Source: Pristiophorus japonicus (Eukaryota). Taken from it: a DNA stretch of 64,000 nucleotides. Made by a program: the position numbers and the translations under genes. This document shows positions 14,046 to 38,393 of this stretch, in pieces (the first letter of the stretch is position 1; each line of letters opens with the position of its first letter). The notes under the pieces are model-generated. The model worked only from the letters and a program-made list of their open reading frames with translations. It was not told the DNA's origin and did no database searches. Location: NCBI RefSeq assembly GCF_044704955.1, contig NW_027254113.1, positions 1 to 64,000 of the forward strand, in the 5' to 3' direction.

Positions 14046-14113
14046 GACAAAAGCATAATGCAACCTCTACCTAACCTATTGTGGGGGGGGTGAGTGGAGT
14101 CCTTTGTTGACCT

Positions 14114-19699: not shown

Positions 19700-21045
19700 T
19701 GCGAAAAATAGAGACAAAATTAACAGTCACTTGGACAAGTATGGATTAATTAAAGGAAGCCAGTATGCAGTTGTTAAAGGTAAATGGTGTTTAAATAACT
19801 TGATTGAGTATTTTTACATTGGTAACAGAGAGGGTAGATGAGGACAATGCGGTTGATGTGGTATACATGGACTTACAAAAGGCATTTGTCGAAGTGCCAG
19901 CTAGTACGTTTGCCTGCAAAGTAGAAGCCCATAGAGTAAAAGGGAAAGTGACAGCATGGGTACCAAATATGCTGAATTACAGGAAAGAGGGATTAGTGAT
20001 GAATGGTATGTGTTTCTGGCTGGAAGCTGTTTTTCAGGTATCAGTGTTACCCAGGGGTCTTTATCAGGAACGTTGCTTTTCTTGATATATATTGACGAAT
20101 TGGACTTGGGTGTACATGTCTCAATTGCAAAATTTACAGACGACACAAAACTTAGAAGTATGCTGAACATTGACGCGGACAGTGATAGACTTCAAAAGGG
20201 GACCGCAGGCTGGCGGAATTAGCGGACCCGTGGCAGATGAAATCCAATGCAGAAAAGTGTGAAGTGTAACATTTTGGTAGGAAGAACGAGGAGAAGCAGT
20301 ATAAATTAAAGGGTACAATCCTAAAGGGCGTGCATGAACAGAGAGACCTGGGATACACGTTCACAAATCGTTGAGAGTGGCAGGTTGAGAAAGCAGTTAA
20401 AATAACAATCGCCATCCTGGGCTTCATAAATAGAGGCATAGCGTACCAAAGCATGGAAGTTAAGATAATCCTCTATAAAACGCTCGTTCGTGCTCAACTG
20501 GAGTGTTGTATCCAATGCTGTGCATCACACTTTAGGAAGGATGTGAAGGCCTTCGAGAGAGTGCAGAAAAATTAGAAGAATGGTTCCAGGGATGAGGGAT
20601 TTCATCTACGTGCATAGACTGGAGAAGCTGGAATTGTTCTCTGGAGCAGTGAACCTTGAGAGGACATTTGATAGAGGTATTCAAAATCATGAGGGTTCTG
20701 GACAGAAAAGACAGGGTGAAACTCTTCTCATTGGCGGAAGGTTCGAGAACAAGAGGACACAGATTTAAGTGGACTGGCAAAAGAACCAAAGGCGACTTGA
20801 GGAATAACTTTTATATGCAGCGAGTGGTTATGATCTGGAAAGCACTGCCTGAAAGGATGGTGGTGGCAAGTTCAATGGTGGTTTTCAAAAGGATGTTGGA
20901 TAGCTACCTAAAGCGGAAAAATGCAGGGCTATGGGGAAAAGGTGGGGAGTGGGAATAGCTGAGGTGCTCTTGCAGAGTGCGGACAGGGGCTCCACAGGCC
21001 GAAATGTATCCATTTATGCTGTAACCCAATCTATGATTCTATGAT
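19700..21045 (+). mobile_element. CR1 LINE RT/3' fragment
   Basis: VDVVYMDLQKAF, KFTDDTKL and IWKALPERMV motifs; TTCTATGA tail. Confidence 0.88.
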
Positions 21046-21719
21046 CCTGCACCAGCCACAATATAATGATATGATGGTACGATATGGGCGCACTTACAAC
21101 GTCACCAACAACACCTTAAAATTGAAATTCTATTTCCCATTGCAAGCTGCTATACTCAGTAAAGTGAGCAACTGTTTGGCAGGGAGGTATAACAGAAAGT
21201 AAAGAAGCATTGCATGCAATTCCTTTCCTGGTAAAAGGCACCAAATTCTTTAATTGGGTAACAGCATTTGAATAGGATTGACGAATCGCCACGATGTAGT
21301 TACTCTCCTCCCTCTCATGTGAATTTGGCGCATCACTCAGAATGCCACTCAGTAACAATAAAGGAGGAGTTACACACATTTTGGAGGAGCATTGCTCTGG
21401 GTAGTATTTCTGAATGGTAATTCAAGCCTCCCTCCCAACTGCACCTCACTTGTTCAAATTAAGAAAATATTCGGGGATGCAATTTAACCATTCAACGTTA
21501 TGAATATTGCAAAAGAAGAAATTGGAATCAGTAAATAGAGTGAACGAGAGAAAGTGTGAGAGAGGAGAGAAAGATTGAAATGGAGAAAGAACAAGAAGCG
21601 TAAGAGAACAAAATAAGGTAATAGTAAAAGAAAGCAAAAATGACAGAAACCAAGAAATGTTTAACTTGGTGATTGTCCTTCTATACCCGCTGTTTCTCTT
21701 AGATGTTTGTATCTATTCT

Positions 21720-21872
21720 CGAGATATGGGCGTAGATGGCAAGGCCGGAATTTATTGTGCATTACTGGCTGCCCTTGAAAAAGTGTTGGTGGGCTTTCTC
21801 CTTGCACCGCTGCAGTCCATGTGGTGAATGTGATGTCACGTAGGAAGTTCCAGTATTTCAACCCATGGACAA
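21720..21872 (-). mobile_element. HE1 SINE / HER1 LINE-like 3' end
   Basis: GGCAAGGCC..ATTTATTG...GCCCTTGA...CCGCTGCAGTCCATGTGGTG motif, recognised from recall of elasmobranch repeats. Confidence 0.5.
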
Positions 21873-22179
21873 TAAAGTAACAACGATAAATGAAAATTCC
21901 GGATGGTGCTTGACATATAGAATCACACAATAATACAGCATTGAAGGAGGTCGTCTGACCAATCTTGTCTGTGCTCGCTCTGTGAAAGAACCTTCTCCAA
22001 ACTACTCCTTCCATTAACCCCGCTGTGTTTTGGTCGACACGAATACGCTTCTTCTTATAATTTGCTGTAAAGAGACTTGCAGCATGATTCAAGGGGAATT
22101 GGAGCATTGCTGCGGGACAACGGTCCCGTACGTAGAATGATACAACACCTAAGGACGCCGTTACGATCCTTTGTGCCTC

Positions 22180-22570
22180 CTCTTTGCAAGAGCTGTTCAA
22201 TTAGTCCCACACCTTTGCATTCCGCCATAGAACTGTTCGTTTATTCGTTCAAGTGTTTACACAATTCAATTTTGAACGTTGCTACTGACTCTGCTTCCTC
22301 CACCCTTTCAGGCTCTGCATTGCGGATCAAAGCAACTCGCCTGGTAAAATAATGTTTCCTCGTGTCATCTGTGGTTCCTTTCCCAATTACTTTAAATCTT
22401 TGTGCTTTGGTTACCGACCCTTCTGCTAGTGGAAACAGTTTCCCTAATTTAATCTCTCAAAACTCTTCATAATTTTGAACAACTCTATTAAATCTCTTCT
22501 TAACCTTCTCTGTTTTAATGAGATCAATGCCAGCTTCTCCAGTCCCTGCACAGAATCCCCTCATCCCTGT
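22180..22570 (-). mobile_element. Degenerate CR1 3' fragment
   Basis: Reverse complement similar to the CR1 3' region at 20650-20950. Confidence 0.65.
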
Positions 22571-22641
22571 TATGAAAAAAAATTCAACATGTTGTTTTAA
22601 AAGTTCCCTCAATTACAGATATTGCTTTATCGAATCGCTCG

Positions 22642-22694
22642 ATGACAGATATCTTCTTGGTTTGGTCTGTGGTTTCCCTGGAATTTTTTACATA
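22642..22694 (+). pseudogene. Candidate leader exon of the V pseudo-segment
   Basis: ATG reads MTDIFLVWSVVSLEFFT (hydrophobic, signal-peptide-like) about 260 bp upstream of the V acceptor; donor site not clean. Confidence 0.35.
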
Positions 22695-22952
22695 GTCGAT
22701 CAGTTTGAAGCACCGTGATTCTCAGTCAACAGAAATAGACGGCGCTGTATTCATTTTCTGCTACAAAAATTGACAAAGGAAAAATTAATATTCATTTAAA
22801 TGACGAGCATCGAATTTTCCTCTTGCAAAATCGGCACCAATTTCCCTGGTGTTATAGCGGTATAAGGTAAACTGCGTTGCCGGGATCAGGTGCAGGCGTA
22901 CTAGTAACGATCTGGATCTTCGGAACTGGTGTTGTAAGTACATTTATTTCAG

Positions 22953-23272
22953 CTTTATCTCCTTCATATACCGTAATCTCATATTGAGGCTGCATTACCG
23001 AACTCCATTGGATTTTACCTGTAAACCTTATTTAAATCATCATTTAATGTCCTTCTTAATTAGCATAATTTAAACCAGCGCAGGGAACACTTACCACAAC
23101 CTACCTGCTACCGAGATTATTCTGGTGAAATACATCGGCTATTATGAAGGTAATATATTTTGCCAGAGACGTTTCTCTGCAGATCTCTAAATTGTGACAA
23201 AGTTTACCAGTTTAACCATCTCTGGGCTGCAGATGACCGAACCTGCAATTTTTTTTAACGTGCCCTGGGGCT
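22953..23272 (+). pseudogene. T-cell receptor alpha/delta-type V gene segment pseudogene
   Basis: TTTATTTCAG acceptor, then 320 bp to the heptamer. FR3 reads QRRFSADL*IVTKFTSLTISGLQMTEPAI, then (frameshifted) RALG, matching ...LTISGLQLTDSAVYYCAL. A DFTCK remnant marks the first Cys. Confidence 0.75.
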
Positions 23273-23311
23273 CACAGTGATGGAACTCAGTTCAACCCTC
23301 GTACAGAACCT
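23273..23311 (+). other. Recombination signal sequence (23-RSS)
   Basis: Perfect heptamer CACAGTG (23273-23279), exactly 23-bp spacer, nonamer ACAGAACCT (consensus ACAAAAACC), directly after the V FR3. Confidence 0.75.
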
Positions 23312-23990
23312 CCCGCCACTTTGTAGATCTTGGCTCCGACTGCTGAAGTCGTATATAACGGCGGGCAGATCCTGCCACATTGGTTCCTGTGAGCCGACAC
23401 ATACTGAGATGGACCCAAAGGACAGTCTCCTGTATGAAGGGCTCACAATAAACTGATTTCTTGATACTCGGGGAAATGTCCTGCAGAGCCAATCAATTGG
23501 GCAGGTTGAGTATCTTAGCGACATACACGAAGCAGATGCCAACTGGTTGCAGCTAAAGTTAATTGTGAGAACAGCATGACAACATTCGCTGGCATCACCT
23601 CGGATCTAGAATCAGAATATTAAGCCTGTGCTGGCACTTTGAAAGAGCTATTGTATTAGTCCCAATCTTTTCTGAAAGCCCTGCAATTTTCTCCCTTTAG
23701 ATATTTAACTAATTCCCTTTTGAAAGTTAATATTAAGTCTTTCCCCCCACTCTTTCACGTAGTATATTCCTGATCATAACTGCATCAATAAATTCGGCCC
23801 TTTTCACCTCAGGCTCCTTTTCCAATTTGCTTAAATCAGAAATCAAACATCAGGAAATATATGTGTCCCTGGTACTAACTTCAACTGAGTTGCGTACCTG
23901 GATTCCGTGGATGACGCCATAATTCCTCGCATACATCATAGCACAGTGATTGGCTGTTTCTTCGAAGGTTACTGCCGTATCCGTAGGATT

Positions 23991-24272
23991 TGTTCACTGA
24001 TTTCACGTTGATAGTATCAGAAGGAATGGCGCAGAGCAGGAAGACAGGATCTCCAGGGTGATGTTCAGTGAGTTCAGCGAATGGTATCAAAGGGAATGAA
24101 GCAGAGCAGGGAGGCAGGATCCCTAGGAAGATGTTCAGTGAGTTCAGGGAGATGGTATCAGAAGGAATGGAGCAGAGCAGTGAGAACAAATCCGTGGTTG
24201 ATGTTCAGTGAGTTAAGCGAGATGGTATCAGAGGGAATAGTGCAGAGCAGACAGAAAGGCAGTCCGGGGAAG
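23991..24272. repeat. About 70-bp tandem repeat x4
   Basis: TGTTCAGTGAGTTCAG..GATGGTATCAGA.GGAATG..GCAGAGCAG units at 23991, 24062, 24132 and 24202. Confidence 0.85.
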
Positions 24273-24294
24273 AAGTGACAGCGGGTCGTGTTTA

Positions 24295-25110
24295 ATTTGA
24301 GATCATGCACTTTGGCAGAAAAAAATCAAAGAGCCAGTTATTATTTAAATGGAAAAAGATTGCAAAGTGCCACAGTTCAGCGGGACCTGGGGGTACTTGT
24401 GCATGAAACACAAAAGGATGATATGCAGGTACAGCGAGTGATCAGGAAGGCCATTGGTATCTTGGCCATTATTGTGAAGGGGATGGAGTATAAAAGCAGG
24501 GAAGTCTTGCTACAGTTATACAGGATATTGGGGAGGCCACAGCTGGAACTGTGTGCGGTTTTGGTTTACATATTTATGAAAGGATATACTTGCTTTGGAG
24601 GCAGTTCAGAGAAGGTTCACTCGGATGATTCCGGAGATGAGGGGGTTGACTTATGAGGAAAGGTTGAGTAGTTTGGGCCTCGACTCATTGGAATTCAGAT
24701 CAATGAGATGTGATCTTATCGAAATGTATCAGATTATGAGGGGGCTTGACAAGGTGGATGCAGAGAGGATGTTTGCACTGATGGGGGAGATTAGAATTAG
24801 AGGGCATGATCTTAAAATATGGGGCCGCCCAATTAAAAAAGAGATGAGGAGAAATTTCCTCTCTAAGAGGGTTGTAAATCTGTGGACTTCGCTGCCTCAG
24901 AGAGCCGTGGAAGCTGGGACATTGAATAACCATATGATAGAAATAGACAGTTTTTTAAACGATAAGGGGCTATGGGGAGCATGCAGGGAAGTGGAGCTCA
25001 GGACATTATCATATCAGCCATGATATTATTGAATGGCGGAGCAGGCTCGAGATGCAGTATGGCCTACTCCTGTTCCAATTTCTTATATTCTTATGTTTTT
25101 ATGTATGTTC
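24295..25110 (+). mobile_element. CR1 3' fragment
   Basis: QRDLGVLVHE and YEERLSSLGLDSLEFR motifs; 3' tail. Confidence 0.9.
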
Positions 25111-25539
25111 CTCATAAAGGAGAACGGCTGGCAGTGATTACCGTACTCATTTCTGTCTGTGTGGACAATATGCATTCAGGTCACCTTTAAAGAGTTGAAT
25201 CGAAAACAAAACTTACATTCTACGAATGCCCTCCCAGAGAGGAGGATGTCAATCGTATATTTGGGCAGAACAAAACGACAATGATTTTACATCAGAAATT
25301 GATATTGCCCGTGCATCACACATTCTGTATGTAGGTGCCCAACGGGCACAAAGCTCCAAATGTACCTGCAGATGCAGCGTGAACCCTCATCTCCTCTCTG
25401 TCAAAAATAGTCTCTCCACCTGTCGTCTCTTTCTTGGCTTTCTGTATGTATATAACAGAAACATTGGAGCGCCTGTCTGTGTGTCAGTTAGGCCCCAGTC
25501 TTTGGGAATCATTCCAAGAGTTTGTGCTCCCTAGTGTGT

Positions 25540-25870
25540 CTGGAAGTGTTTGATGGGACAGTATCGAGTGAGCTTTAATCTGTATTTAACCCGTGCTGCT
25601 CCTGCCCTGGGTGTGTTTGATGGGACGGTGTAGAGGGAGATTTATTCTATATTAAACCCGTGCTGTACCTGCCCTGGGAGGGTATGGAGTGCAAGTGTAG
25701 ATGGAGCTGTTCTCTGTATCTAACCCGTACTGCACCTGCCCTGGGAGTTCTGATGGGACAGTGCAGAGGGAGCTTTACTCTGTATCTAACCCGTGTTGTA
25801 CCTGCCCTGAGAGTGTTTGTTCGGACAGTAGAGGGAGATTTGCTCTGACGCATACTATACTGTATCGGAC
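25540..25870 (+). repeat. About 65-bp shark tandem/satellite repeat
   Basis: GTGTTTGATGGGACAGTGTAGAGGGAGCTTTACTCTGTATCTAACCCGTGCTGTACCTGCCCTGGGA units, about 5 copies. Confidence 0.85.
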
Positions 25871-26616
25871 TTTGGTGCATCAGAGGCCTGCTCTTTAATA
25901 TAACCTGGCACGTGAAAGACCATAATATTAGAGGAGACCGCCTGGTCGCTGTGCAGTCATTCCGCCTCTGGTGCATGATGCAACAAGACAGGGGAAAATG
26001 TGCCTTCACTCTGATGGGACACTAGGTGGCGCAGTGGCTCCTTAACCGAAGGGACTTGGATTCAAACACAAACAGGATAGGACGCGGGAAGAATAAATTT
26101 CATGGAAATAAAACAACATGTGATAGGGAAATAGAACATGTGAAGGAGCCTTGGAGTAAGGAGTTCAGCAAAGTCCAATTTATTCCATTTGCCATTGCAG
26201 TTTTATTAACAATTTCACAGAGAACAATTTACAGAGAAGGTTTTCAAAAGTTCACACAAATTGAATATAACAAATGAGCGTCACATTAATACCAGAACAC
26301 AGTCGGTCTGAGCTGCCAGCTATCTGTACAACTCTAACAGACATCAGGGAGAGAAACAGATGTTCAACACCAAGGGAAGGGAATAATTGTGAATCATGAA
26401 TGATAAAATGACTTATGTACACATGAGATATTCAAACAATTGTTTAACTCCGAGATACATTTACATTATAGCCACGGTTATCTCACACATTTCAAACAGA
26501 GAAATGAAAAAGTTGAAGGCAATTGACTCCGGGAATCACCAAGAGGACATAATTTATTTTCAAGACACAGTTAACAACCAGAGGAGAAAAATCCACAGCG
26601 GCCGAAATTCAGTCAA

Positions 26617-26625
26617 TCACTTGAC
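26617..26625 (-). pseudogene. IGHM: IgM TM2 exon (VK-stop)
   Basis: CTCTTTAACAG acceptor then GTC AAG TGA, completing the KVK cytoplasmic tail; AATAAA signals near 26180-26207. Confidence 0.85.
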
Positions 26626-26763
26626 CTGTTAAAGAGGGATAAAAGTTTGAAGCAGCGTTTTAGTGATTTGGCGCATTAATTTCAGGGTTGTTATCAATGA
26701 AACATTTAGAGATTTGTCAAACCTCTTCAATCAACTCGAACTGAGTGCATTGAATCTTCTCAC

Positions 26764-26891
26764 CTTCACCAGAGTGATGGCAGCGCTGTAAGAAATGCTC
26801 AGGAAGAACAAGATGATGAATGTGGAAGCGGTTGTCCAGATGTTGCTGCTCTCGTCCTCACACTCTTCACTCCAGATGTGGTCTGAGGAAT
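26764..26891 (-). pseudogene. IGHM: IgM TM1 exon (intact)
   Basis: AG/GT-bounded 128-bp phase-1 exon: DSSDHIWSEECEDESSNIWTTASTFIILFFLSISYSAAITLVK, with the antigen-receptor TM (CART) motif. Confidence 0.92.
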
Positions 26892-27529
26892 CTACGGGAT
26901 GTAGGGAAGGAAATATATTCAGATCGTTTGTTAATCCAAGATCTCATCTTATTATTACGTATTCTATTTTCTTTCTTTAAGGTGTTAGTTTGTTCTCTAT
27001 TTTAATGTTCAATGTATGCCCTGTGTTAAGTTAATCACGCTCACTAATCTATCTGTGTTCCTAATTCCACAGTCGTTCCTTCTTTATGATCCTTCTATAG
27101 TCGGTTTTGGAAAATATGACAGTTTTCCTTCAATGTTACAGGCTAATTGATTTTGCATCAATTCCATAGGATTTACCATTCGGGAATAGTATGATGTAAT
27201 ATCGAGGGAAATATACTGAATGATATCGATTAATTTAACAATAGCTTCAGATAGCTAATTATTCGGAGGCTGTCAAAGGGACAGGGTAAGACATCAGATG
27301 TGAGTTATAATCTGGATTAATTTGTGGTAGTCAAGGTTCTGAACATAATTAATTTGCATGAGTTTCCAACTAAGAACTTTGATTCAGTTTGTGTGCAGGA
27401 CCAGAATATAGGAATGTAAGATATTATGGTATCAGAAATGATTTATTTAATACAATCGTTGCAGACTGTCTGTTCAAAGAATTTATTTTAATTCTATGTT
27501 CGTCTGTTACCTGACGTATTTTTTGCACT

Positions 27530-28160
27530 TTAGTGTTTGTGTATGTGTGTATGACGATCTCTTCTTTTGGTGTTGTCTGTGTTTGTGTGTTGATGTGTAT
27601 TGATATGTAAGTTTGAATGTTTTAATGTGTCATTCCATATATGTATATTTATGTGTAAGTGTTTGTGATTTTTTGTAAGTTTGTGTATGTTTACATGTAA
27701 GCCTTTGTGTGTATATATGCAATTTTTTGTGGTTATGCTTAAATATGTGTGTTCTTTGTAAGTACGTTCATGTATGTGTTTTAATGTGTTTGTGTATGGA
27801 TATGTGTAAGTGTTGTGTATGTTTATGGGTAAGAATGTGTGCATTTATGTGTAACTGTGTATGTTCGCATGTAAATGTGTGTGTGTGTTATCCGTTAGTT
27901 AGTTTGTGTTGAATATGTGTTTATGCGAGTTTAAGTGTGTGTGTTTGTGTGTGTGTGTGTGTGTGTTCGTGCTTCTGTTTTATTAAAGGGTGTGTTTATT
28001 TTTGCTGTCATATTAATGGTGCTGTGGTTCTGACAATGACAGTGTGTATTATATTCTGGGTATGCGTAATATCTTGTGTCAGTGTGTCAATGTATGTGTT
28101 TATGTGTAAGTCGCTGTGTGTTTATGTGTAAGTCCGTGTTGTGTTTATGTGTAAGTGTGA
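27530..28160. repeat. TG-rich low-complexity tract
   Basis: Degenerate (TG)n/(TATG)n. Confidence 0.9.
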
Positions 28161-28299
28161 ACTTCCACAAAAACATACACTACTAACGTTTACACGCATT
28201 CTTCCTCGCTCTGTGTAAATGTGTTCAGTGTGAGACACAATGTGACATCAGCCGACGGAATACAACAACTCAATCGATGAGCATCTCTCTCTGGTGGCA

Positions 28300-29290
28300 T
28301 TGAGGGGTACAATGAGTTAACAATTGCCCTTTGCCCTCTCGCTTGTGCGGAAGTCGGATACATTGGGTTAACAATTGCAGATTCCCCTCACTATGCTGGG
28401 GTAGTGGGCGGGACAGTAAGTTAACAATTGCCCTTTCCCCTCTCTCTGGTGGGGAAGAGGGTTTACATCATCATAGGCAGTCCCTCGCAATCAAGGAAGA
28501 CTACTTCCACTCTTAGCATGATTTCTTAGGTGGCTGTTCAGTCCAATAGGGAACCACAGTCTCTGTCACAGGTGGGAAAGACCGTGGTTGCGGGAAGGGG
28601 AAGATTTTACAGGTTTGCCGCACGTTCCTTCCACTGCCTGCGCTTGATGTCTGAATGCTCTTGGTAACGAGAGACGAGGGGCTCAGCGCCCTCCCGGATG
28701 TACTTCCTCCATTTAGGGCGGTCTTTGGCCAGGGACTCTCAAGTGTCAGTGGGTATGTCGCACTTTATCAGGAGGCTTTGAGGTCGCTTGTAACGTTTCC
28801 CCTGCCCACCTTTGGCTCATTTGCCATGGACGAGTTCCGAGTAGAGCGCTTGCTTTGGGAGTCTAGTGTCTGGTGTGCAGACAATGTGGCCGGCCCAGAG
28901 CAGCTGATCAAGTGTGGTCAGTGCTTCGCTGCTGGGATGTTATCCTGGACAAGGACGCTAATGTTGGCGCGTCTGTCCTGCCAGGGAACTTGTAGAATCT
29001 TGCAGAGACGGAGTGAGGTTACAGTGGATTAACAATTGCCGTTTCCCCTCACTCTGGTGGGGCAGTGGGAAGTACAGTGGGTTCAGAATTGCCATTTCAC
29101 CACTCTTTGGTACGGCAATGGCGTTACAGTGGGTGAATAATTGCCCTTTCATCTCTCTCTGGTAGTGCAGTGGGAGGTACAGTTGGTTCAGAATTGCCCT
29201 TTCACCTCTCTGGTGGGGTAGTGGGAGGTACAGGGGTATAACAATTGCGATTTCACCTCTCTCTGGTGGGGCGATGGGAGATACAGTTCG
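28300..29290. repeat. About 50-bp minisatellite split by an RTE insertion
   Basis: TTAACAATTGCCCTTTC.CCTCTCTGGTGGGG.AGTGGGAGGTACAG units on both sides of 28466-29010. Confidence 0.75.
28466..29010 (-). mobile_element. RTE-clade LINE 3' fragment
   Basis: Minus strand encodes LCKILQVPWQDRRANISVL...GHIV...LPKQALYSEL; ends in a (ATG)n-type tail. Confidence 0.8.
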
Positions 29291-29714
29291 TGTTCGTGTG
29301 TGGACCTCATTTCAGATCCCAGAGTGTGCGATGCTGCCAAATAAAACTGGCCCCAAATCTGAAGGGATGGACAACACGAGAAACAAGGGCACCGAGATAT
29401 AAATGTACAGCATTTGTTTATCGGGAAATAGAACTATGCAGATTCTCCCAGTGGGACGAAAGTTGCTGAAATGACTTTGAGGTATCCTGTCATTAAAGAG
29501 CTTCTCTTTGTCTCCAACCTATATATGAGCTGAGAGCGCTGAATGTACCAGCTTTGGCCACAAGTCCGACAAATATTCTGCTTCAGATTAACAGCCCGCC
29601 GCTTGGCTAAAATAGGAAACAATATTAATTGAGCGGCTGTGTGTGTAACTCACGATTGGAAGAAAAGGCCTTTATTGTTTTTTATTTAAGAACTGAAAGG
29701 CAATCGAGAGATTC

Positions 29715-30097
29715 TCATTGATAAGAATTGATGTTGTCCATCAGAACAAGGGAAATATTCACAAAACTGGGTTTACCTCTGGATTTATTGACGGTTCTGT
29801 TGGTGATCTTCAAGGAGATCGCTTCATGTCCAAACACACAGGAGTAAGAGGCGCCGCTGGCCCACTCGTTGGCTGCAATGGATAGCAGGCTGTACACAAA
29901 GAATGATCTGCTGCCATTCTCCGCCATCACCTCAGTGTTCTTGTAGTTGACCGGCTTGTCCTTGACAGTCCATTTGACGAAGATCTCTCGGGGGGAGAAA
30001 CCTCTCACTAAGCAGGTGAGGCTGACCAACCTCTGAGCAGAGACTTCTTCTGCCGAGGGCAGGAGGACAGACACGGCTGCTTCCCATGGATCTTTCG
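29715..30097 (-). pseudogene. IGHM: IgM CH4 exon plus secretory tailpiece
   Basis: [17 protein letters not shown]...[14 protein letters not shown]...[20 protein letters not shown]; acceptor CTACAG; internal G|GTAAA donor (after 29777) for TM splicing; AATAAA at 29671-29676. Confidence 0.93.
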
Positions 30098-30978
30098 CTG
30101 TAGAACAGTTACAATAAAGGCCAATGAACTGGACAGTTCCAGAGAAAATGGTGGGAGTTTTAATCTAATAAAACAGGCGTGTTGAGGTTGTGAGGGTGAT
30201 TAAATTGGTAAAAATCGGAATCCCGACATCAACCCGACCACTCCTGGTTGCAATATTTTATTTGAATAATATATTTATAGGAGGCTGGAATCCTCTATTT
30301 TAACCTCTATTCGGTTTTTAACTGTAGCTGGTCCGGCTTGACATACTGTGTAAATCCCAGCAGTTACAGCTGCACCCAGGTGGTTATTGCCCTTACACCT
30401 CCCTCCTGGATCCAGGGTCCCTGCCTAACCCACCCCCCGCGATCCGAGAGCTCCTCACTCGGATTTCAATCCTCCTCTTCTCCCGGGTGGCCTGTGAGAC
30501 CACCACCACCAACTCGCCTTCTCCGTTTAAATTCGCCAATGTCCCGTAGTTACACGTCAGAGAAATATGCTCTTCGTTGACATTTAACGCTTTATTATTT
30601 CCCCTCTGGGGCCTCTCTGGTTTACCATCCCGCAGCAGAGTGAACATAATCTTTCTCTCTGAAATCTTGAAGGGTTAGACTTGAATTTACTGCACAGATC
30701 AAGGCGATTTGGCCAACCGGTCTATGCCTGTGTTTATGCTCCATACAAGCCTCAACCTGACTCAGTTCATCTAACGCTAATAACATACCCTTCTATTCCT
30801 TTATCGCTCATGGACTTATCCAGTTTCCCCTAAAATACATAACCTCAGGTCAAAGAGTGGGATTACCAAACTGAATGATCAGAGTATCCATTAAGCACTT
30901 TATGTAATGAATTGGCCCTTGAACATGCACCGGAAATATTCACAGTGTCTGACTTATTGCAACAGTCTCCCCGCTCAC

Positions 30979-31276
30979 CCTTTTCCTTGTGGATAGAATC
31001 TCTGATAGGAGTCGGCATATCCTGCTGGCTCACCACGCAGTAGAACTTATCCCCACTCAGCGAGTCTTGTGTCGAGATGTTTAAGTTGCTGATCACTATG
31101 TTGGGATCCTCACCGGGTTGGACGGCAATCTCTGATTTCAAAGCCTCCTTTTCTCTGGTCCAGGTAACGGTGAGCCCATAAGGAGCGTCAGACACGACGC
31201 AGGTTAAGGTCACCGTCGCCTCCCGTAAGTCCTGTGCCAGTGACTGTGATTTTTGAATCGCTGCATGGGACATCCA
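30979..31276 (-). pseudogene. IGHM: IgM CH3 exon, frameshifted
   Basis: [21 protein letters not shown]...[19 protein letters not shown]; a 298-bp exon between phase-1 junctions (not a multiple of 3) that lacks the LPPS motif. Confidence 0.9.
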
Positions 31277-31984
31277 CTGCAAAACAGGAATGAAAGTCAG
31301 GAAAAGCTGCATCTTCAGAATCAGGACACAATATTTAGCCTTAACTCGTTCAAGGGGGCTAAATCACTTTTGAGATAGCAACCTCTCGCTGTTGCTTTAA
31401 CACCGACGTTATTTGAAGGACAATGAATTGGCAACGATTCGGGGAGATCTGTAACATTTCCTGTGTATTTGCTGCCAGAGTCACCTGTAATTGGCTGTGA
31501 AGCAAATAACCAGCGTAAAACGGGAATACATTGTGGTGCAATTGTGTTAGGCACTGAATAGCGCTCTTCCTGAAATCCCTTGCTCCTTTATACCCATCTA
31601 TAGATCCTTGCATCCAAACGCATCTCCGCTGGTTGTAATAGTGAAGCCCAAATAGCCCGAAGGTCAAGAGGTCTACACCAGCATTACTCTCGTTCGAAAC
31701 AAGTGTCAATTTAATTTCAGGATTTATGGGACAACAGGAAACAAAGCTAAGTTTCTGGTCACTTGCTGTGATCTTTATTGCGGTGAAAATGTGCAGGAAC
31801 CAGTCACAGCCCCCGTCAGAGGAGAAGTGCAAGGTCCGGAGAATGGAGTTCCAAAGGGTCTTTTGTGGTGGGGCATCATTTTTAATGATGTGAGGTAGTT
31901 TGTTAATTTCTGTCATTACTGAACATTTATCATGTCTGGTGAGAGAGAGTCAGAGTTAAATATGACCTCAGGGCATTAATAGCA

Positions 31985-32490
31985 ACATAGGAACAGGAGG
32001 AGGCCATTCATCCCATCTATCCTCTCCCGCAATCCAGTTATATCAGGGCTGATCTACACTCAACACCATCTTCACGCCTTGGTTCTGTAACCCTTGATAA
32101 TCTTGCCTAACAAAAATCTATCAATCTCACTTTTCAACTTTTCAATTGAAACCAAGCTTCAGCAGCTTTTGGGGAGGGAAATCCAGACTTTCTGTGAAGA
32201 AATCCTTCCTGACATCACTTCTGCACGATCCAGCTCTAACTTTAAGATTCTGCTATTTGTACTGGACTTTTCCAACAAAGGAAATAATTGTTCTACATCT
32301 ACTTGATTAATTGTATTTATCTACTTGAACACCTCAATTGTATCACCTCTTAATATTCTCTACTCGTCTCCTCATCATTTTATTTTATTAGTCCCGGTAT
32401 AATTCGGGTAAACCTGAACTTTATCGCCTCCATGACCATTATATCCTTCCTGAGGTGCGGAGCCCAGAATTGGACTCAGCGCTCTGAATA
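31985..32490 (-). mobile_element. Degenerate CR1 3' fragment
   Basis: ACATAGGAACAGGAGGAGGCCATTCA tail in reverse orientation. Confidence 0.7.
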
Positions 32491-32687
32491 GGGTAGATGC
32501 CCATTCCAACAGTGGGTTCCTGGACAGTTAGCAGTAAAGGGTTCCAGACTCCGACTGCCACTCCGTATATGATCAGCCAACTCAGGATAAACCTGAGAAT
32601 AAGGGCACGTTACTCACTGCCTGAAATCAGAGCAGGGGGAAAGCTTCGTTGGCGAGTTTATTAAATCCTGAACAATGAGGAATCCTG

Positions 32688-33110
32688 AACCAGAAGATCG
32701 TGGGTTGAAGTCCCACTCCAGATACTTGATCACAAAATGTAAGCTGAGATTCCCAGTGCAGTACTGGGGGCGTGGTGCACTATCGGAGGTGCCGTCTTTC
32801 GGATCACGTGTTAAACCGAGGATCCGTCTGGCCTCAGGTGGACGTAAACGTTCCCCTGGAATTATTTCAATGAAAAGCCGAGGAGTTCTCCCTGGTGGCC
32901 TGGGAATATTTATAGCTCAAAAAACACCACTAAGCAAAATATAATCTGGTCATTATCACACTGCTGTTTGTGGGAGATTGCTGTGCACTAAATGATTGCT
33001 GCACGTTGTACATTACAACTGTGATCACATTTCACAAATTAATTCATTGGCTGGCAAGCGATTTGGTTCAGACTAAGGTAGCTGAAGGCGCTGTTTCTAG
33101 GCAAGTTTGT
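32688..33110 (+). mobile_element. SacSINE1/DeuSINE-family SINE
   Basis: tRNA-like head remnant (GTGGGTTGAAGTCCCAC), Deu core GGAGGTGCCGTCTTTCGGAT...TTAAACCGAGG...CAGGTGGACGTAAA, and 3' tail. Confidence 0.8.
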
Positions 33111-33242
33111 AATCACAATAATACACAAACTGCATGATTGGAAATTAGGAACAGTTCGGTGCTTTTTACTAATTTCAATAAAAGTCCTGACTGAGATCAA
33201 CGCTCAGAATGGTCTGTAACCTCCTGGGATTGTACCTCTTAC

Positions 33243-33560
33243 CCGGAGATCTGATGAAGTTACGGCTTTGCGTGACCCCTTCATGAGTGACCTGGCAGGT
33301 GTAGACCGAGCCGGTGAACCATTCCTCGGCGGGGACTGTCAGCCGACTGGCCGCCGAGAAGTTCCCGTTCACCTCAAATACGGGAGAGGTGACGGAGCCC
33401 GAATCTAGGAGTTGTCCACTCTCCAGCCAATTCACGGTCAGTGACTTTGGCCGGAAATCGATGATTGAACACACGGCGCTTGCATATCTGCTGCTGGTGA
33501 TTTGTTCAGTAGAACTCAGCGTGAGGAGAACAGTTGGAGGGATGATGTCGCGTTCAGGAT
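33243..33560 (-). pseudogene. IGHM: IgM CH2 exon (open frame)
   Basis: 318-bp phase-1 exon: [14 protein letters not shown]...[15 protein letters not shown]...[30 protein letters not shown]; AG acceptor and GTAAG donor. Confidence 0.93.
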
Positions 33561-33679
33561 CTTCAAGAGAAGACAAATTATTGACAATGCTTGCAAAATC
33601 AATCATTAAGAAATGCATAGTGTCCTTATATTTTAACAGGTTCTTCGCTGTCAGACTAACACTAACCTGGCATTTACAG

Positions 33680-34100
33680 AGAGCAGAACTGTGCATAGTC
33701 TTCTCAGTGTGATCTGAAGACCGGAACTGTGCATAATATTCTTAGTATGATCTGGAGACCAGAACGTTACACGGTATTCCAAGAGTGATTAGGAGACCAA
33801 AACTGTAAACAATATTCTTAGTGTGATATGGAGACCTGAACTGTGGACAGTATTCTAAATGTGATATGGAAACCATAACTGTGCATAATATTTTAAGTAT
33901 GATAGGGAGACCAGAACTATACACAGTATTTTAATTGTGATATGGGAGACCAGAACGGTGCACAGTATTATAAGTGCGATAGGGAGACCAGAACTATACA
34001 CAGTACTCTAAGTGTGATATGGAGAACAGAACTGTACACAGCATTCCAAGTGTAATATGGAGACCAGAACTGTACACAGCACTCTAAGTGTCGTCTAACC
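33680..34100. repeat. 38-bp tandem repeat x about 11, CR1-derived
   Basis: GGAGACCAGAACTGTACACAGTATTCTAAGTGTGATAT units; resembles antisense CR1 GGAGACCAAAACTGTACACAATACTCCAGGTGTG at 58496. Confidence 0.85.
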
Positions 34101-34934
34101 AAATTTCTGTCCAAGTTGAACATACCTTCTCATCTTATCACAGTTTGCCCTGTATCCCACATCACTAACCTAGCATTGTGATGGCCTAGAACGACACACC
34201 ACGTCAAACCTCGCAGTAGATTGTGCTGCTGCACACCTCTGACTCGGTGATGGTTAACCGGCTCTTTTTCGTTCTTCCAGGAAAGGCTGATGATTTTATC
34301 TTTCTTTCAGGAAAAGCTGGTGATTTTTGGTTAGTAGTCCATCGCCAAACAGCGGAAGCAGTTTCTCCCTACTCAGCGCACTGTGATCTGGGCTCTATTC
34401 CATTCTATTGAATGGACGTTTCTTGAGTTTCCTCCTTCCTCCCACTCAATAAATAATTCGAATTAAATACCATTCCAAAATCCGGTTAATTGGAAGTTTC
34501 TCCTTAAAACGGCCCATTTCAATTCCCATTGTAGTACTTGTTATATAACAATGACCTGGACTTGGTTATAGAGATTCCATCTTGAAGTCCGAAGATGAAG
34601 CAAAACATGGCTACGTAGCCAATAGTGAGCATGATAGTAACAGACTTGAAGAGGAATCAGAGAGACGAGTGAAATGGGCAGGGACATGGCAGGTGCAATT
34701 TAATGCGGATAATTGAGAAGCGGTGCACTTTGGGTGGAACATGGAGAGGCAGTATCATCTAAATAGTATTGTTTTGAGGGGATACAAAAACAAAAATATC
34801 TGGATATTGCACCCGTGTCAATATTACTAAAAATGTTCGGAAATGCTCACTGAAAGCCGAATTGTATGCGTTTGTATGTGGGGTTGGGGTTGAAGCCCAG
34901 ATTCTCAACGAGACAGAATCCAGACTCTCACAGG

Positions 34935-35016
34935 ACCAGGATAGCCGAGTGGTTGAGGCGTTGGCCTTAAAATTCAATGGGTTTTTCCCGCGTGGGTTCG
35001 TACCCAACTCCTGGTA
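34935..35016 (+). tRNA. tRNA-Leu(TAA)-like, degenerate
   Basis: ACCAGGATAGCCGAGTGGTTGAGGCGTTGGCCTTAAAATTCAATGG...GGGTTCGTACCCAACTCCTGGTA. Confidence 0.75.
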
Positions 35017-35741
35017 TCTCTTTAATTTAACACGGATTTCCTCCCATTCTGATCAGTGAGACCGGATTTTCATCGGTTGAATCAGCAAATTTCTGTAACA
35101 ATGTGACACTCTGAACCGATAATGAAATGAAATTGTGAAATGTATCTGTGTCGCTCGGTCTCTGCCTCTCTCTCTCTCTTCAGAGTGTTGTGCATATGTT
35201 TGAGTCTTTGTCTCTCTCTGTCTGTCCCTGTTTCTCTGTTTATCTCTGTCTCTCAATCTGTCTCTTTCTCACGGTGCCACGTCTGTTCCAATGGGATTCT
35301 CTCAGACTCTTTGCCTGACTGGCTCTCTCTTTCCCATCATTTCGGTCTGTCCATGTCTTTGCCTGTCTCTGTTAGTCCCTGCCTGTAAGCTGAGAAGTAT
35401 TTCCATCATTTTCTGTTTTAGTCTCTATCGCTCTCTCTCAATCTGTCTCTCTCCTTGTCACTGTCTTTATCATTGTCTTTCTCTCATTCTTTCCCTCTCT
35501 CTCTTAATAGATCACACACACACATCTCTGTATATGTATATGTTTGAGTCTTTTTCTCACTCAGTCTGCCTCTCCTTCTCAGTCTCACACTTTCTGTCTC
35601 TCGTTGTCTCTATCTCGCTGTCCGTCTCTCCCTGTTTGTCGGTTTGTCTCTGTCTCTCAATGTGTCTGTCGACTTCTCATGGTGTCCAATTCTGTTCACA
35701 CTGGCTCGATTCCTGCTCTGACAAAACTGGCACTCGACAGT

Positions 35742-35813
35742 TCCTCGTTAGTATAGTGGTGAGTAACCCCGCCTGTCACGCGAGAGACCGGCGTTCAATT
35801 CCCCGACGGAGAG
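35742..35813 (+). tRNA. tRNA-Asp(GTC), best-preserved copy but with stem mismatches
   Basis: TCCTCGTTAGTATAGTGGTGAGTAACCCCGCCTGTCACGCGAGAGACCGGCGTTCAATTCCCCGACGGAGAG, about 5 differences from canonical vertebrate tRNA-Asp; T-run downstream. Confidence 0.8.
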
Positions 35814-36007
35814 GCAGTTGTTTCAAAATATAGAATTTTACTTCTGTTTCTTGGTAGAGATTCATATTAAAAAGTTCCAGAGCAAGAAAGAACTGTAAAG
35901 GTACATGTAGAAGATAGAGCCTCTTCCAGATTTTTAGCAAACGGAGACTTTTTCACGATTCTTTGGCCGTCTGCTGCACAGAGATGGATGACTGAGTTTT
36001 TTCTGAG

Positions 36008-37012
36008 TGTTGTTTACATTGTACATTAATGATTTAGACGAAGGGATTAAATGCAGTATCTCCAAATTTGTGGATGACACTAAGTTGGGTGGCAGTGTGA
36101 GCTGCGAGGAGGATGCTATGAGGCTGCAGAGTGACTTGGATAGGTTAGGTGAGTGGGCAAATGCATGGCAGATGAAGTATAATGTGGGTAAATGTGAGGT
36201 TATCCACTTTGGTGGTAAAAACAGAGAGACAGACTATTATCTGAATGGTGACAGATTAGGAAAAGGAAGGTGCAACGAGACCTGGGTGTCATGGTACATC
36301 AGTCATTGAAGGTTAGCATGCAGGTACAGCAGGCGGTTAAGAAAGCAAATGGCATGTTGGCCTTTGTAGCGAGGGGATTTTAATACAGGGGCAGGGAGGT
36401 GTTGCTACAGTTGTACAGGGCCTTGGTGAGGCCACACCTGGAGTATTGTGTACAGTTTTGGTCTCCTAACTTGAGCAAGGACATTCTTGCTATTGAGGGA
36501 GTGCAGCGAAGATTCACCAGACTGATTCCCGGGATGGCGGGATTGACCTATCAAGAAAGACTGGATCAACTGGGCTTGTATTCACTGGAGTTCAGAAGAA
36601 TGAGAGGGGACCTCATGGAAACGTTTAAAATTCTGACGGGTTTAGACAGGTTAGATGCAGAAAGAATGTTCCAAATGTTGGGGAAGTCCAGAACCAGGGG
36701 TCACAGTCTGAGGATAAGGGGTAAGCCATTTAGGATCGAGATGAGGAGAAACTTCTTCACCCAGAGAGTGGTGAACCTGTGGAATTCTCAACCACAGAAA
36801 GTAGTTGAGGCCAATTCACTAAATATATACAAAAGGGAGTTAGATGAAGTCCTTACTACTCGGGGGATCAAGGGTTATGATGAGAATGCAGGAAGGGGGT
36901 ACTGAAGTTTCATGTTCAGCCATGAACTCATTGAATGGCGGTGCAGGCTAGAAGGGCTGAATGGCCTGCTCCTGCACCTATTTTCTTTGTTTCTATGTTT
37001 CTATGTTTCTAT
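36008..37012 (+). mobile_element. CR1 3' fragment (relatively young)
   Basis: KFVDDTKL and RPHLEYCVQFWSP motifs; (TTTCTATG)n tail. Confidence 0.92.
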
Positions 37013-37047
37013 GAATCTCTACCTTGTACTCACAAGGTTTTCACAGG

Positions 37048-37130
37048 ACTAGGGTAGCCGAGTGGTTAAGGCGTTGTCCTTAAAATTGAATGGGGCTTTT
37101 CCCGCGTGGGTTCGTGCCCTACTCCTGGTA
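37048..37130 (+). tRNA. tRNA-Leu(TAA)-like pseudogene
   Basis: ACTAGGGTAGCCGAGTGGTTAAGGCGTTGTCCTTAAAATTGAATGG...CTCCTGGTA. Confidence 0.7.
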
Positions 37131-37371
37131 TCTCTTCAATTTGACACGGATTTCCTCCCATTCTGATCAATAAAACCGAATTTTCATCGGTTGAATCAGC
37201 AATTTTCTGTAACAATGTGACACTCTGAACCGATAATAAAATTAAATTATGAAATGCATTTGTGTCGCTCGGTCTCTGCCTCTCTCTCTTCAGAGAACTG
37301 TGCATGCGTTGGGATGTTTGAGTCTTTGTCTCTCTCAGTCTGACTCACTCTGTCTGTCCATGAAAGACACA

Positions 37372-37451
37372 GTACTCGTGGCCGAGTGGTTCACGCGACG
37401 GAAGAGAAATCCATTGGGTTATCCCGCCAGGTTCGAATCCTGCCAACAACG
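37372..37451 (+). tRNA. tRNA-Ser(AGA)-like pseudogene
   Basis: GTACTCGTGGCCGAGTGGTT...AGAAATCCATTGGG...GGTTCGAATCCTGCC. Confidence 0.7.
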
Positions 37452-37747
37452 ATTCTCAGCATTTTTCATTCCATTTCACAATTTAACCGGTTCTCTGGCA
37501 AACTGATCCTGAGATAAATGGAATAACGTCCCACACCTTTCAACACTGACAGTTTATTCTCATTTTTATTAATCTGCAATATTCACGATACATCCGTTTC
37601 AAAAATCGCAAACATCAGTCAAAGTTGCGACAGTGATTCAACCTGTATATCCCTCGAGATGTCTAAGGCATCTGTGCATGCCCGTTGGTGCGTGCAAATC
37701 TTTGGTTATGTGTGTGTGTGTCTCTGTGTCTCTCTATCTCTATATAT

Positions 37748-38393
37748 GGCATGTTCGCCTTCATAGCTGGGTGATTTGAGTATAGGAGCAGGGATGTCTT
37801 ACTGCAGTTGTACAGGGCCTTGGTGAGGCCATACCTGGAATGTTGTGTTCAGTTTTGGTCCCCGAATCTGAGAAAGGACGTACTTGCTATTGAGGGATTA
37901 CAGCGAAGGTTCACCAGCATGATTCCCGGGATGGCAGGATTGACATCTGAGGAGAGACTGGATCAACTGGACTGGTATCCACTGGAGTTTAGAAGAATGA
38001 GAGGGGATCACACAGAAACATATAAAATTCTGACGAGATTGGACAACTTAGAGACTGGAAGAATGTTCTCGTTGCTGGGGTGTTTGAGACCAAGGATTAA
38101 ATTCTAAAAATAAGGGGTAAGCCATTTATGACCGAGATGAGGAGAAACTTCTTCACTCAGAGAGTGGTTAACCTGTGAAATTTTCTACCGCAGAAAGTCG
38201 TTGAGGCCAGTTCGTTAGATATAATCAAAAGGGAGTTAGATATGGCCCTTATGGCTAAAGAGATCAAGGGGCATGGAGAGAAAGCAGGAAATGGGTACAG
38301 AGGTTGAATGATGAGCCATGATCTTATTGAATGGTGGTGCAGGTTCGAAGGGCCGAATGTCATATTCCTGCACCTAATTTCTATGTTTCTATG
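37748..38393 (+). mobile_element. CR1 3' fragment within array unit
   Basis: QFWSPNLRKDVLAIEG motif; CR1 tail. Confidence 0.88.

What the first reader, a model, noticed from the sequence alone, without database searches (positions are those of the whole stretch)
22642..33560. TCR alpha/delta-type V segment with a 23-RSS facing an IgM constant-region pseudogene
Seen in sequence: a decayed V exon (22953-23272; FR3 ...RFSADL*IVTKFTSLTISGLQMTEPAI..RALG) followed by CACAGTG-23bp-ACAGAACCT, about 3.3 kb from the IgM TM2 exon on the opposite strand. The ORF track misses it. Established: cartilaginous fish mix Ig and TCR parts (IgH V joined to TCR-delta C, NAR-TCR), and IgH-related segments have been reported linked to the TCR alpha/delta locus. 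Inference: this is either an Ig/TCR interdigitated part of the TRA/TRD locus or a duplicated orphon cassette preserving that linkage. This is the best candidate for an under-described system in the window.
Basis: partly seen in the sequence, partly recalled or inferred. Interest (0 to 1): 0.8.

Follow-up and report, generated by a model that had tools for sequence, protein, structure and literature searches.

The report
Dead V genes beside headless IgM
Behind a shark IgM antibody gene that has lost its front half lie two broken variable-gene pieces that still carry recombination signals; this mix of antibody and T-cell-receptor-like parts was described for sharks in 2025, so it is a decayed example of a known layout.

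Summary
A V-type FR3 (23170-23272, +) abuts a perfect heptamer, a 23-bp spacer and a 6/9 nonamer (23273-23311). It lies 3.3 kb from IgM TM2 on the other strand.

This relic is on the minus strand: leader 23135-23095, GTAAGT donor, 76-nt intron, V exon 23018-22718 ending ...EYSAVYFC, then CACGGTG, a 22-nt spacer and AAAAATTCC. The two relics lie head to head with their signals pointing outward.

The IgM part has CH2, CH3, CH4, TM1 and TM2, all open and with intact splice sites. It has no CH1 and no V-D-J in the window, and its secretory-tail cysteine is lost.

The "TCR alpha/delta" label could not be shown. The only formal hits are to antibody V domains (V(+): 11 of 11 light chains; V(-): 16 antibodies and 1 TCR alpha). 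No shark V references could be fetched.

TCR alpha/delta-type V exons between shark IgH clusters were published in 2025 (PMC12227049). This scan's earlier notes record the same cassette on other pieces of this genome. Verdict: a real but dead relic and a new member of a known kind; low interest.

The parts
23170..23272 (+). V(+) relic, solid part: FR3 from RF.. to the V end (RFSADL*IVTKFTSLTISGLQMTEPAIFFNVPWG). It has one stop (23188-23190), and Asn (AAC, 23257-23259) stands where the second Cys should be. It may extend 5' to about 23066 in the same frame, but there it overlaps the leader and intron of V(-).
23273..23311 (+). 23-RSS of V(+): heptamer CACAGTG (7/7), 23-bp spacer, nonamer ACAGAACCT (6/9 to the consensus ACAAAAACC). 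It points towards the 3' end of the IgM relic.
23095..23135 (-). Putative leader exon of V(-): ATG plus MYFTRIISVAGRL, followed by a GTAAGT donor. It is one base out of phase with the V exon, which is either a lesion or a sign that this leader reading is chance.
   Evidence: read from the sequence, no statistical test
23019..23094 (-). Putative 76-nt leader intron of V(-) (GTAAGT ... TTTACAG).
22718..23018 (-). V(-) relic, V exon of 301 nt in one frame: KIQWSSVMQPQYEITVYEGDKAEINV...PDPGNAVYLIPL*HQGNWCRFCKRKIRCSSFK*ILIFPLSIFVAENEYSAVYFC*LR. It has three stops (22854-22852, 22794-22792, 22728-22726). The first Cys is replaced by Val (22941-22939), no FR2 Trp is recognisable, and the second Cys is kept.
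22680..22717 (-). RSS of V(-): heptamer CACGGTG (6/7), 22-nt spacer, nonamer AAAAATTCC (6/9). It points away from the IgM relic.
33243..33560 (-). IgM CH2 exon: 318 nt, open, AG acceptor and GTAAGA donor, phase 1, Cys-Trp-Cys kept.
30979..31260 (-). IgM CH3 exon: 282 nt, open, phase 1.
29715..30097 (-). IgM CH4 exon with secretory tail and stop. The internal membrane-form donor (G|GTAAAC) follows 29777. The tail reads ...LMDNINSYQ, where Tyr replaces the Cys seen in 4 of 4 comparators. There is a 3-residue gap relative to 6 of 6 comparators.
26764..26891 (-). IgM TM1 exon (SSDHIWSEECEDESSNIWTTASTFIILFFLSISYSAAITLVK), open, with a GTGAGA donor.
26617..26625 (-). IgM TM2 coding part (VK plus stop) after a TTAACAG acceptor.
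23312..26616 (.). 3.3-kb spacer between the V(+) RSS and TM2. It is mostly interspersed and tandem repeats: a 70-bp array at 23991-24250, a LINE fragment at about 24290-25100 that is repeated elsewhere in the window, and a 67-bp array at 25540-25847. No J and no C exon.

Best explanation
This is a dead remnant of an antigen-receptor neighbourhood in a shark genome. Earlier scan notes call the species a sawshark; my own calls gave only a coded organism.

On the minus strand lies the back half of an IgM cluster: CH2, CH3, CH4 with secretory tail, TM1 and TM2. It has lost CH1 and V-D-J, so it cannot make a heavy chain. Downstream of it lie two V-gene relics placed head to head, each still followed by a 23-type recombination signal.
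- V(+) is a 5'-truncated fragment whose signal faces the IgM 3' end.
- V(-) is a nearly full-length V gene (leader, intron, V exon, RSS) in the same orientation as IgM.

Neither V can encode a domain, because both carry stops and have lost landmark residues. No J, D or C partner is in reach, so nothing here rearranges or is used.

The V relics are orphan, translocon-style V segments of the kind reported between elasmobranch IgH clusters near the TCR alpha/delta locus. Their exact type (TCR alpha/delta, lambda-like or 'intermediate') is unresolved. The cassette was copied several times in this genome after the repeats in the spacer had been inserted.

Shown: the parts, their order and their lesions. 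Inferred: the history (loss of the IgM front half, truncation of V(+), segmental duplication) and the TCR-locus affinity.
For: - V-likeness of both 3' ends: (3634 PDB V-domain hits, best single-V E 6.7e-5) against the control (138 hits, best E 0.0075; 11 of 11 light-chain FR3; 17 of 17 V-domain chains for V(-) alone, E 0.41-7).
- The motif [ST]A.Y[FY]C followed within 22 nt by CAC[AG]GTG occurs once in the window and in 0 of 100 Markov-1 simulated windows.
- Of 32 CAC[ATG]GTG heptamers in the window, only these two follow a V-type FR3 end.
- The two FR3+RSS stretches align with each other better than shuffles do: score -16 against -34.6 +/- 5.7, largest of 300 shuffles -15.
- IgM exons: Pfam C1-set. 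CH4 is 71% identical to a Chiloscyllium punctatum protein, E 1.4e-47. Exon borders and open frames.
- Headless: only the 3 known exons among 1609 six-frame pieces match a C1-set profile; the next best has E 0.11 and does not look Ig-like. No J motif.
- Lesions in CH4.
- Other copies: the DNA contigs of run X1 (same species label) laid on the V region are 95-98% alike, not identical (13 differences plus 2 gaps in 284; 7 in 301). At 22973 and 22975, all 3 contigs carry other letters.
- Print: PMC12227049 section 6.
Against: - The type of either V was not established. Every attempt to fetch shark V references was blank.
- The 59-aa FR1-FR2 piece of V(-) has no V hit in PDB (2 hits, both ribosomal protein S15a, E 1.5) and none in Pfam. 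Among 1.84 billion representatives it had one hit, a spurious repeat protein. V(-) upstream of FR3 therefore rests on gene structure and on motifs that I recall.
- Its leader is one base out of phase.
- All five IgM exons are open while the V relics 3.3 kb away carry 2-3 stops per 100 codons. The constant part is therefore either recently disabled, kept uniform by gene conversion, or still used in some way; 'dead' is inferred from the missing front half and two lesions, not from broken frames.
- Multi-copy status rests on short contigs and on unchecked earlier notes.
- Linkage to TRAC/TRDC is untested.
Confidence: 0.75

Rival explanations
1. V(+) is the relic of an Ig lambda-type light-chain V, not a TCR V. 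It would be an orphan left from an IgL minicluster of the antigen-receptor complex.
For: - All 11 PDB phmmer hits of its FR3 are antibody light chains, several of them named lambda.
- 59 of the 60 listed hits of the control profile, which V(+) dominates, are antibody light-chain V domains.
- It shares the run SLTISGLQ with them.
- A 23-bp spacer is the lambda V arrangement in mammals (recalled).
- PMC12227049 section 6 says some IgL loci are linked in the same complex.
Against: - No J motif and no C1-set exon follow it on the + strand, although shark IgL genes sit in compact V-J-C clusters (PMC12227049 section 6).
- The comparison covers only 29 residues against mammalian proteins, in a bank where antibodies far outnumber TCRs.
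- The RF-to-Cys spacing of 30 codons fits TRAV/TRDV and only some lambda families (recalled).
Confidence: 0.25
2. The headless IgM constant region is still used. Its open CH2-CH4-TM exons would be spliced to a distant or trans-rearranged V exon, possibly a TCR-type V joined by inversion through the facing RSS. This would give a chimeric TCR-V/IgM-C chain, the mirror image of the known shark IgH-V/TCR-delta chains.
For: - All five exons are open, with intact phase-1 splice sites and the membrane-form donor, while the neighbouring V relics are riddled with stops.
- Earlier notes say the cassette is kept in several copies (unchecked).
Against: - The facing V(+) is truncated, has a stop and lacks the second Cys.
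- There is no D or J with a 12-RSS anywhere in the window, so the 12/23 rule has no partner.
- CH4 has lost the tail Cys that 4 of 4 comparators keep, and it has a 3-residue deletion.
- Runs X5-X7 gave no depth over 22592-23586. The pieces they laid on the TM region are only about 82-92% alike, so they come from other IgM genes. Their library type is not on record.
Confidence: 0.04
3. One of the two V readings is a chance pattern. Only one V relic is real, and the other strand's 'V' is an artefact of antisense open frames plus a chance heptamer.
For: - The two readings overlap between 23019 and 23170, so both cannot be ancestral coding there.
- Neither gives a Pfam V-set hit in pieces.
- A single RSS at 3 mismatches is expected 0.78 times per window.
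Against: - Each 3' end is independently V-like: V(+), V(-), and adding V(-) to V(+) raised the hits from 138 (control) to 3634.
- The V(-) motif plus heptamer occurred in 0 of 100 simulated windows.
- The overlap is resolved if V(+) is simply truncated upstream of FR3.
Confidence: 0.07

Closest known systems
Elasmobranch antigen-receptor complex (AgRC) of Flajnik et al. 2025, Sci Adv (PMC12227049; abstract, section 6 and three passages read)
   Same: IgM constant exons lie in the same few kilobases as orphan V exons that carry a 23-RSS and are not part of the IgM cluster. The paper states that TCR alpha/delta-type V exons lie between IgH clusters and that other V domains are intermediate between TCR and Ig.
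   Different: All parts here are relics: the IgM has no CH1 or V-D-J, and the V segments have stops. [quoted passage not shown] Linkage to TCR alpha/delta constant genes and PSMB5 was not testable. The paper's table S1 with coordinates could not be seen because supplements are closed.
Inverted V segment behind a constant gene (TRDV3 behind TRDC, TRBV30 behind TRBC2 in mammals; mentioned in PMC12227049 section 15, gene names recalled)
   Same: V(+) lies downstream of the constant exons in the opposite transcriptional orientation, with its RSS facing them.
   Different: The constant gene here is IgM, not TCR. V(+) is a truncated pseudogene, and there are no D or J segments upstream with which it could join by inversion.
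Shark IgM minicluster (V-D-D-J-C mu 1-4-TM)
   Same: CH2, CH3, CH4 with secretory tail, the membrane-form donor, TM1 and TM2 are in the canonical order and splice phase. CH4 is 60-83% identical to shark and chimaera IgM CH4 sequences.
   Different: There is no CH1 and no V, D or J within the 30 kb upstream held in the window. The tail Cys is replaced by Tyr, and CH4 has a 3-residue deletion.
TAILV / IgH-V use by shark TCR delta (named in PMC12227049 section 15; details recalled)
   Same: Ig-type and TCR-type gene parts lie side by side in cartilaginous fish.
   Different: Those cases are Ig-like V segments used with TCR constant genes. Here, V segments of unresolved (possibly TCR-like) type lie next to an Ig constant gene, and nothing suggests they are used.

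Membership tests
Rearranging antigen-receptor V gene segment | V-domain FR3 ending in ..[DS]A.Y[YF]C a few codons before the signal | tested here: met
   V(-)...EYSAVYFC, then 8 nt, then the heptamer. V(+)...TEPAIFFN with Asn in place of Cys; FR3 matches V domains.
Rearranging antigen-receptor V gene segment | RSS: CAC-heptamer, 12 or 23 (+/-1) spacer, A-rich nonamer directly at the coding end | tested here: met
   V(+): 7/7 heptamer, 23 spacer, 6/9 nonamer. V(-): 6/7 heptamer, 22 spacer, 6/9 nonamer. No RIC score could be computed. Each RSS alone is within chance.
Rearranging antigen-receptor V gene segment | Open V exon with Cys23, Trp41 and Cys104, and a split leader | tested here: not met
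   V(+): one stop within the FR3 part (a second at 23071-23073 if the longer frame is read), no Cys104, and FR1 and leader not found. V(-): 3 stops, Val for the first Cys, no recognisable Trp, leader 1 nt out of phase. Both are pseudogenes.
TCR alpha/delta V (TRAV/TRDV) | Groups with TRAV/TRDV, and not with Ig V, in similarity searches or a tree | tested here: inconclusive
   V(+): 0 of 11 PDB hits are TCR. V(-): 1 of 17 is a TCR alpha chain, E 1.2. No shark V references could be fetched, so no tree was made.
TCR alpha/delta V (TRAV/TRDV) | Lies in the translocon V array upstream of TRD D-J-C and TRA J-C | not testable with these tools
   Only 64 kb are held. No TCR C, D or J is in the window. 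Orphan V segments with no nearby J fit a translocon array but do not prove it.
Ig lambda light-chain minicluster V | V followed within a few kb by J (12-RSS) and C lambda on the same strand | tested here: not met
   There is no J motif in any frame and no C1-set piece on the + strand.
Shark IgM minicluster | C mu 2-4, secretory tail, TM1 and TM2 in order with phase-1 introns | tested here: met
Shark IgM minicluster | V, D, J and C mu 1 upstream of C mu 2 | tested here: not met
   None were found in 33561-64000 on the minus strand. Upstream are a 76-bp tandem array, repeated units of about 3.4-4 kb, and LINE fragments.
Elasmobranch AgRC (IgH clusters linked to TCR alpha/delta) | Same chromosome region as the TCR alpha/delta constant genes and PSMB5 | not testable with these tools
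   No access to the rest of the scaffold. Earlier scan notes place sister cassettes beside TCR-type V arrays (unchecked).

The most novel reading that the evidence does not exclude
The multi-copy cassette 'open-reading IgM CH2-CH4-TM without a head, plus flanking V segments with outward 23-RSSs' is kept because the constant part is still expressed. For example, it could act as an acceptor for trans-rearranged or trans-spliced TCR-type V(D)J exons. That would give a TCR-V/IgM-C chimeric receptor, the reciprocal of the known shark IgH-V/TCR-delta chains.
Probability: 0.03. Interest if true: 0.8.

Novelty: new member of a known kind. Interest (0 to 1): 0.2.

Why it matters
This adds one more decayed example, in a squalomorph shark, to the 2025 report that antibody heavy-chain clusters and TCR-type V segments are interleaved in cartilaginous fish. 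Three small points go beyond that report:
- Two V relics are packed head to head within 630 bp.
- The IgM constant exons are still open although the gene has no front half.

If the sister copies show the same pattern, the open exons would raise the question of gene conversion or residual use. None of this changes the current picture of antigen-receptor evolution.

Tried and rejected
1. Typing the V by homology. Pfam on three V(+) pieces and two V(-) pieces found 0 families. PDB phmmer gave 0 hits for the 38-aa V(+) piece. For the 59-aa V(-) piece it gave only 2 ribosomal-protein rows. For the 21-aa V(-) piece it gave 0 hits.

2. Fetching shark V references.
- ESM Atlas with the 38-aa piece gave only unnamed bacterial clusters at 0.82-0.83.
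- The 1.84-billion representative search with the 59-aa piece gave one hit, a 907-aa tandem-repeat protein, which I rejected as spurious.
- The word-index search with the same piece found no candidate.
- The word-index search with CH2 found 13 candidates, none at E <= 0.001.
Without references, no frameshift-aware alignment and no tree could be made, and RIC scoring of the RSS was not available.

3. Comparative route through IgM CH4 homologues. Their contigs are 958-1937 nt, too short to reach a downstream V, so I did not fetch them.

4. Reads. All four runs are contigs. They show other, 95-98% alike copies in X1 and no cover of the V region in X5-X7. They give no copy number, no expression level and no joints at the RSSs.

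5. A 'fixed RSS-CTCF cassette' (lead from note s1-879426). No CTCF-like motif lies within 2 kb of either RSS; the nearest are at 25524 and 26019.

6. A second copy of the V within the window: none.

7. A transposon-like reading of the two outward RSSs. I rejected it because the heptamers abut coding ends and the nonamers are distal, which is the opposite of RAG-transposon ends (reasoning from the sequence).

8. A review (PMC5192425, passages searched) gave nothing on RSS spacers of shark light chains, so that point stays recalled.

9. The spliced IgM model was searched exon by exon only. The joined step was left out.

Full report
WHAT WAS CLAIMED. It lies 3.3 kb from the TM2 exon of an IgM constant-region pseudogene on the other strand.

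THE SIGNAL AND THE V(+) END. The signal is exactly where stated: heptamer 23273-23279 (7/7), 23-bp spacer, nonamer 23303-23311 (6/9). It is the only 23-RSS in the window at 3 or fewer mismatches. By itself that is within chance: 0.78 are expected, and 50 of 100 shuffles have at least one.

What makes it real is the sequence it abuts.
- The 29-codon open piece 23191-23277 (IVTKFTSLTISGLQMTEPAIFFNVPWGSQ) gave 11 PDB hits with phmmer (E 0.31-1.5). All are antibody light-chain V domains aligned at FR3 positions about 72-95; one row, 3ks0_L, is printed under its antigen's name.
- A two-row profile of this piece and the FR3 piece of the second relic (below) hit 3634 distinct PDB sequences at E <= 10. 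The 60 listed are all antibody V chains. The best chain with one V domain has E 6.7e-5.
- The same profile made with an unrelated 21-aa window piece gave 138 hits, best E 0.0075.

Both FR3 pieces therefore carry V signal. V(+) has a stop at 23188-23190, and Asn stands where the second Cys should be.

A SECOND V RELIC ON THE OTHER STRAND. A scan of all CAC-heptamers with an A-rich nonamer, and of all 32 CAC[ATG]GTG sites, showed one more site preceded by a V-type end. On the minus strand...ILIFPLSIFVAENEYSAVYFC*LR is followed by CACGGTG (22717-22711), a 22-nt spacer and AAAAATTCC.

- The motif [ST]A.Y[FY]C with CAC[AG]GTG within 22 nt occurs once in the window and in 0 of 100 simulated windows.
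- A profile of this 21-aa piece alone hit 17 PDB sequences (E 0.41-7). All are V-domain chains, with the match ending at the conserved Cys: 16 antibodies and one TCR alpha chain.
- Upstream, in one frame, the minus strand reads KIQWSSVMQPQYEITVYEGDKAEINV...PDPGNAVYLIPL*HQGNWCRFCKRKIRCSSFK*... over 301 nt from a TTTACAG acceptor (V exon 23018-22718).
- This is preceded by a 76-nt intron with a GTAAGT donor and a 41-nt ATG exon (23135-23095).
- The leader is one base out of phase, the first Cys is Val, and no FR2 Trp is recognisable.
- The 59-aa FR1-FR2 piece has no formal support. PDB gave only two ribosomal-protein rows and Pfam gave nothing. The 1.84-billion representative search gave one spurious repeat protein, and the word-index search found no candidate.

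That part rests on gene structure and on a TRAV-like FR1 pattern (V.Q....V.EG..A.I.C) that I recall and did not test.

CONSEQUENCE FOR THE OBSERVATION. If that stretch is read as one V(+) exon, the two Cys positions are 79 codons apart, which from recall is longer than in any V type. The 38-aa and 71-aa pieces have no hits.

The simplest reading is a 5'-truncated V(+) (FR3 plus RSS, 23170-23311) lying head to head with a nearly full-length V(-). Their signals point outward and their coding ends are 554 bp apart. The two FR3+RSS stretches resemble each other more than shuffles do: score -16 against -34.6 +/- 5.7, with a maximum of -15 in 300 shuffles. There is no second copy of either in the window.

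THE IgM PART. On the minus strand the exons are as follows.
- CH2: 33560-33243.
- CH3: 31260-30979.
- CH4 with secretory tail: 30097-29715, with the membrane-form donor after 29777.
- TM1: 26891-26764.
- TM2: 26625-26617.

All frames are open, all junctions have AG/GT, and the phases fit. CH4 is 71% identical to a Chiloscyllium punctatum protein (E 1.4e-47). In total, 6 of 10 candidates scored E <= 0.001.

Against 4 of 4 comparators that cover the tail, the window has Tyr for the tail Cys. Against 6 of 6 comparators it lacks three residues after KPV.

A C1-set profile built from these exons and the six hits found only the same three exons among 1609 six-frame pieces. The next best had E 0.11 and did not look Ig-like. 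No J motif exists in any frame. Upstream of CH2 lie a 76-bp tandem array, repeated units of about 3.4-4 kb, and LINE fragments.

The gene is therefore headless, with two lesions at conserved sites, but it is not riddled with stops like the V relics. I searched the exons one by one and left out the joined model.

V TYPE. I could not resolve it.
- For a light-chain (lambda-like) V(+): every formal hit.
- For a translocon, TCR-like V: both V segments are orphans with no J or C behind them, whereas shark Ig genes sit in compact clusters (PMC12227049, section 6). The RF-to-Cys distance in V(+) is 30 codons, which fits TRAV/TRDV and some lambda families from recall. V(-) ends in SAVYFC.
- PDB holds no shark TCR V that I could see and is dominated by antibodies, so the hit lists cannot decide the question.

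No shark V reference could be obtained, so no tree was made.

OTHER COPIES AND EXPRESSION. One run search found four DNA runs of one sample holding 46-55% of the sampled words, and three small runs of unknown library type. When these were laid at 80% likeness on 21000-26950, the listed X1 contigs over the V region were 95-98% alike, not identical. At 22973 and 22975, all 3 contigs read other letters. This fits further copies or a different individual.

X5-X7 had no depth in the five bins 22592-23586. On the TM region they laid only pieces that were about 82-92% alike, that is, from other IgM genes. Contigs give no copy number and no expression level.

This scan's earlier notes (AI notes, unchecked) describe the same layout, a V with a 23-RSS 3.3-3.5 kb behind a dead IgM back half, on several other pieces of this genome. 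Some have rows of three or four V relics. Those notes call the species a sawshark. So the scan has found this before on other DNA.

WHAT IS KNOWN. Flajnik et al. 2025 (PMC12227049) was found. I read the abstract, section 6 and three passages. [quoted passage not shown] It also recalls the inverted V behind the C exons of the TCR beta and delta loci, which V(+) resembles in position.

Its table S1 could not be seen, so I cannot say whether comparable V-behind-IgM pairs are listed there. My two other searches (listings only) showed no paper on a V relic behind a headless IgM. The sawshark search (listing only) showed no immune-locus paper for that species.

VERDICT. The finding is real but ordinary: a dead Ig/TCR-neighbourhood remnant, a new member of a published kind. 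The TCR alpha/delta label is unproven. The only mildly puzzling point is that the constant exons of a headless gene are still intact.

Noticed in passing
window 10699-13949 (minus strand), inside the 59-64% G+C block 10001-16000: A G+C-rich non-LTR retrotransposon sits in an otherwise roughly 42% G+C region. It has long open frames: a 782-aa ORF with a reverse-transcriptase domain (E 1.7e-32) and a 270-aa ORF with an endonuclease/exonuclease/phosphatase domain (E 3e-8). Two further long ORFs beside it (14114-15187 and 15256-16188, minus strand) have no Pfam family. The open frames suggest a young insertion.
   Followed up: partly
window 34808-44570: Upstream of the headless IgM lie three or more copies, 77-78% alike, of a unit of about 3.4-4 kb (34808-36000, 38784-40442, 42187-44570). 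They are rich in CT/GT low-complexity runs. Such repeats occupy the place where CH1 and V-D-J would be expected.
   Followed up: partly
window 33679-34091: A 76-bp tandem array (38-bp half-unit, 5.4 copies, 79% matches) starts only about 120 bp upstream of the CH2 acceptor. It may mark where the front half of the cluster was lost.
   Followed up: no
window 26019-26032 (+): A CTCF-like motif (ACACTAGGTGGCGC, 1 mismatch to the consensus used) lies about 600 bp beyond TM2, between the IgM relic and the V relics. The window as a whole has 18 such matches against 10.3 expected.
   Followed up: no
window 29715-30097 (minus strand), CH4: All IgM constant exons are open, although the V relics 3.3 kb away carry 2-3 stops per 100 codons. 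The two parts of the cassette have very different apparent ages of decay.
   Followed up: partly
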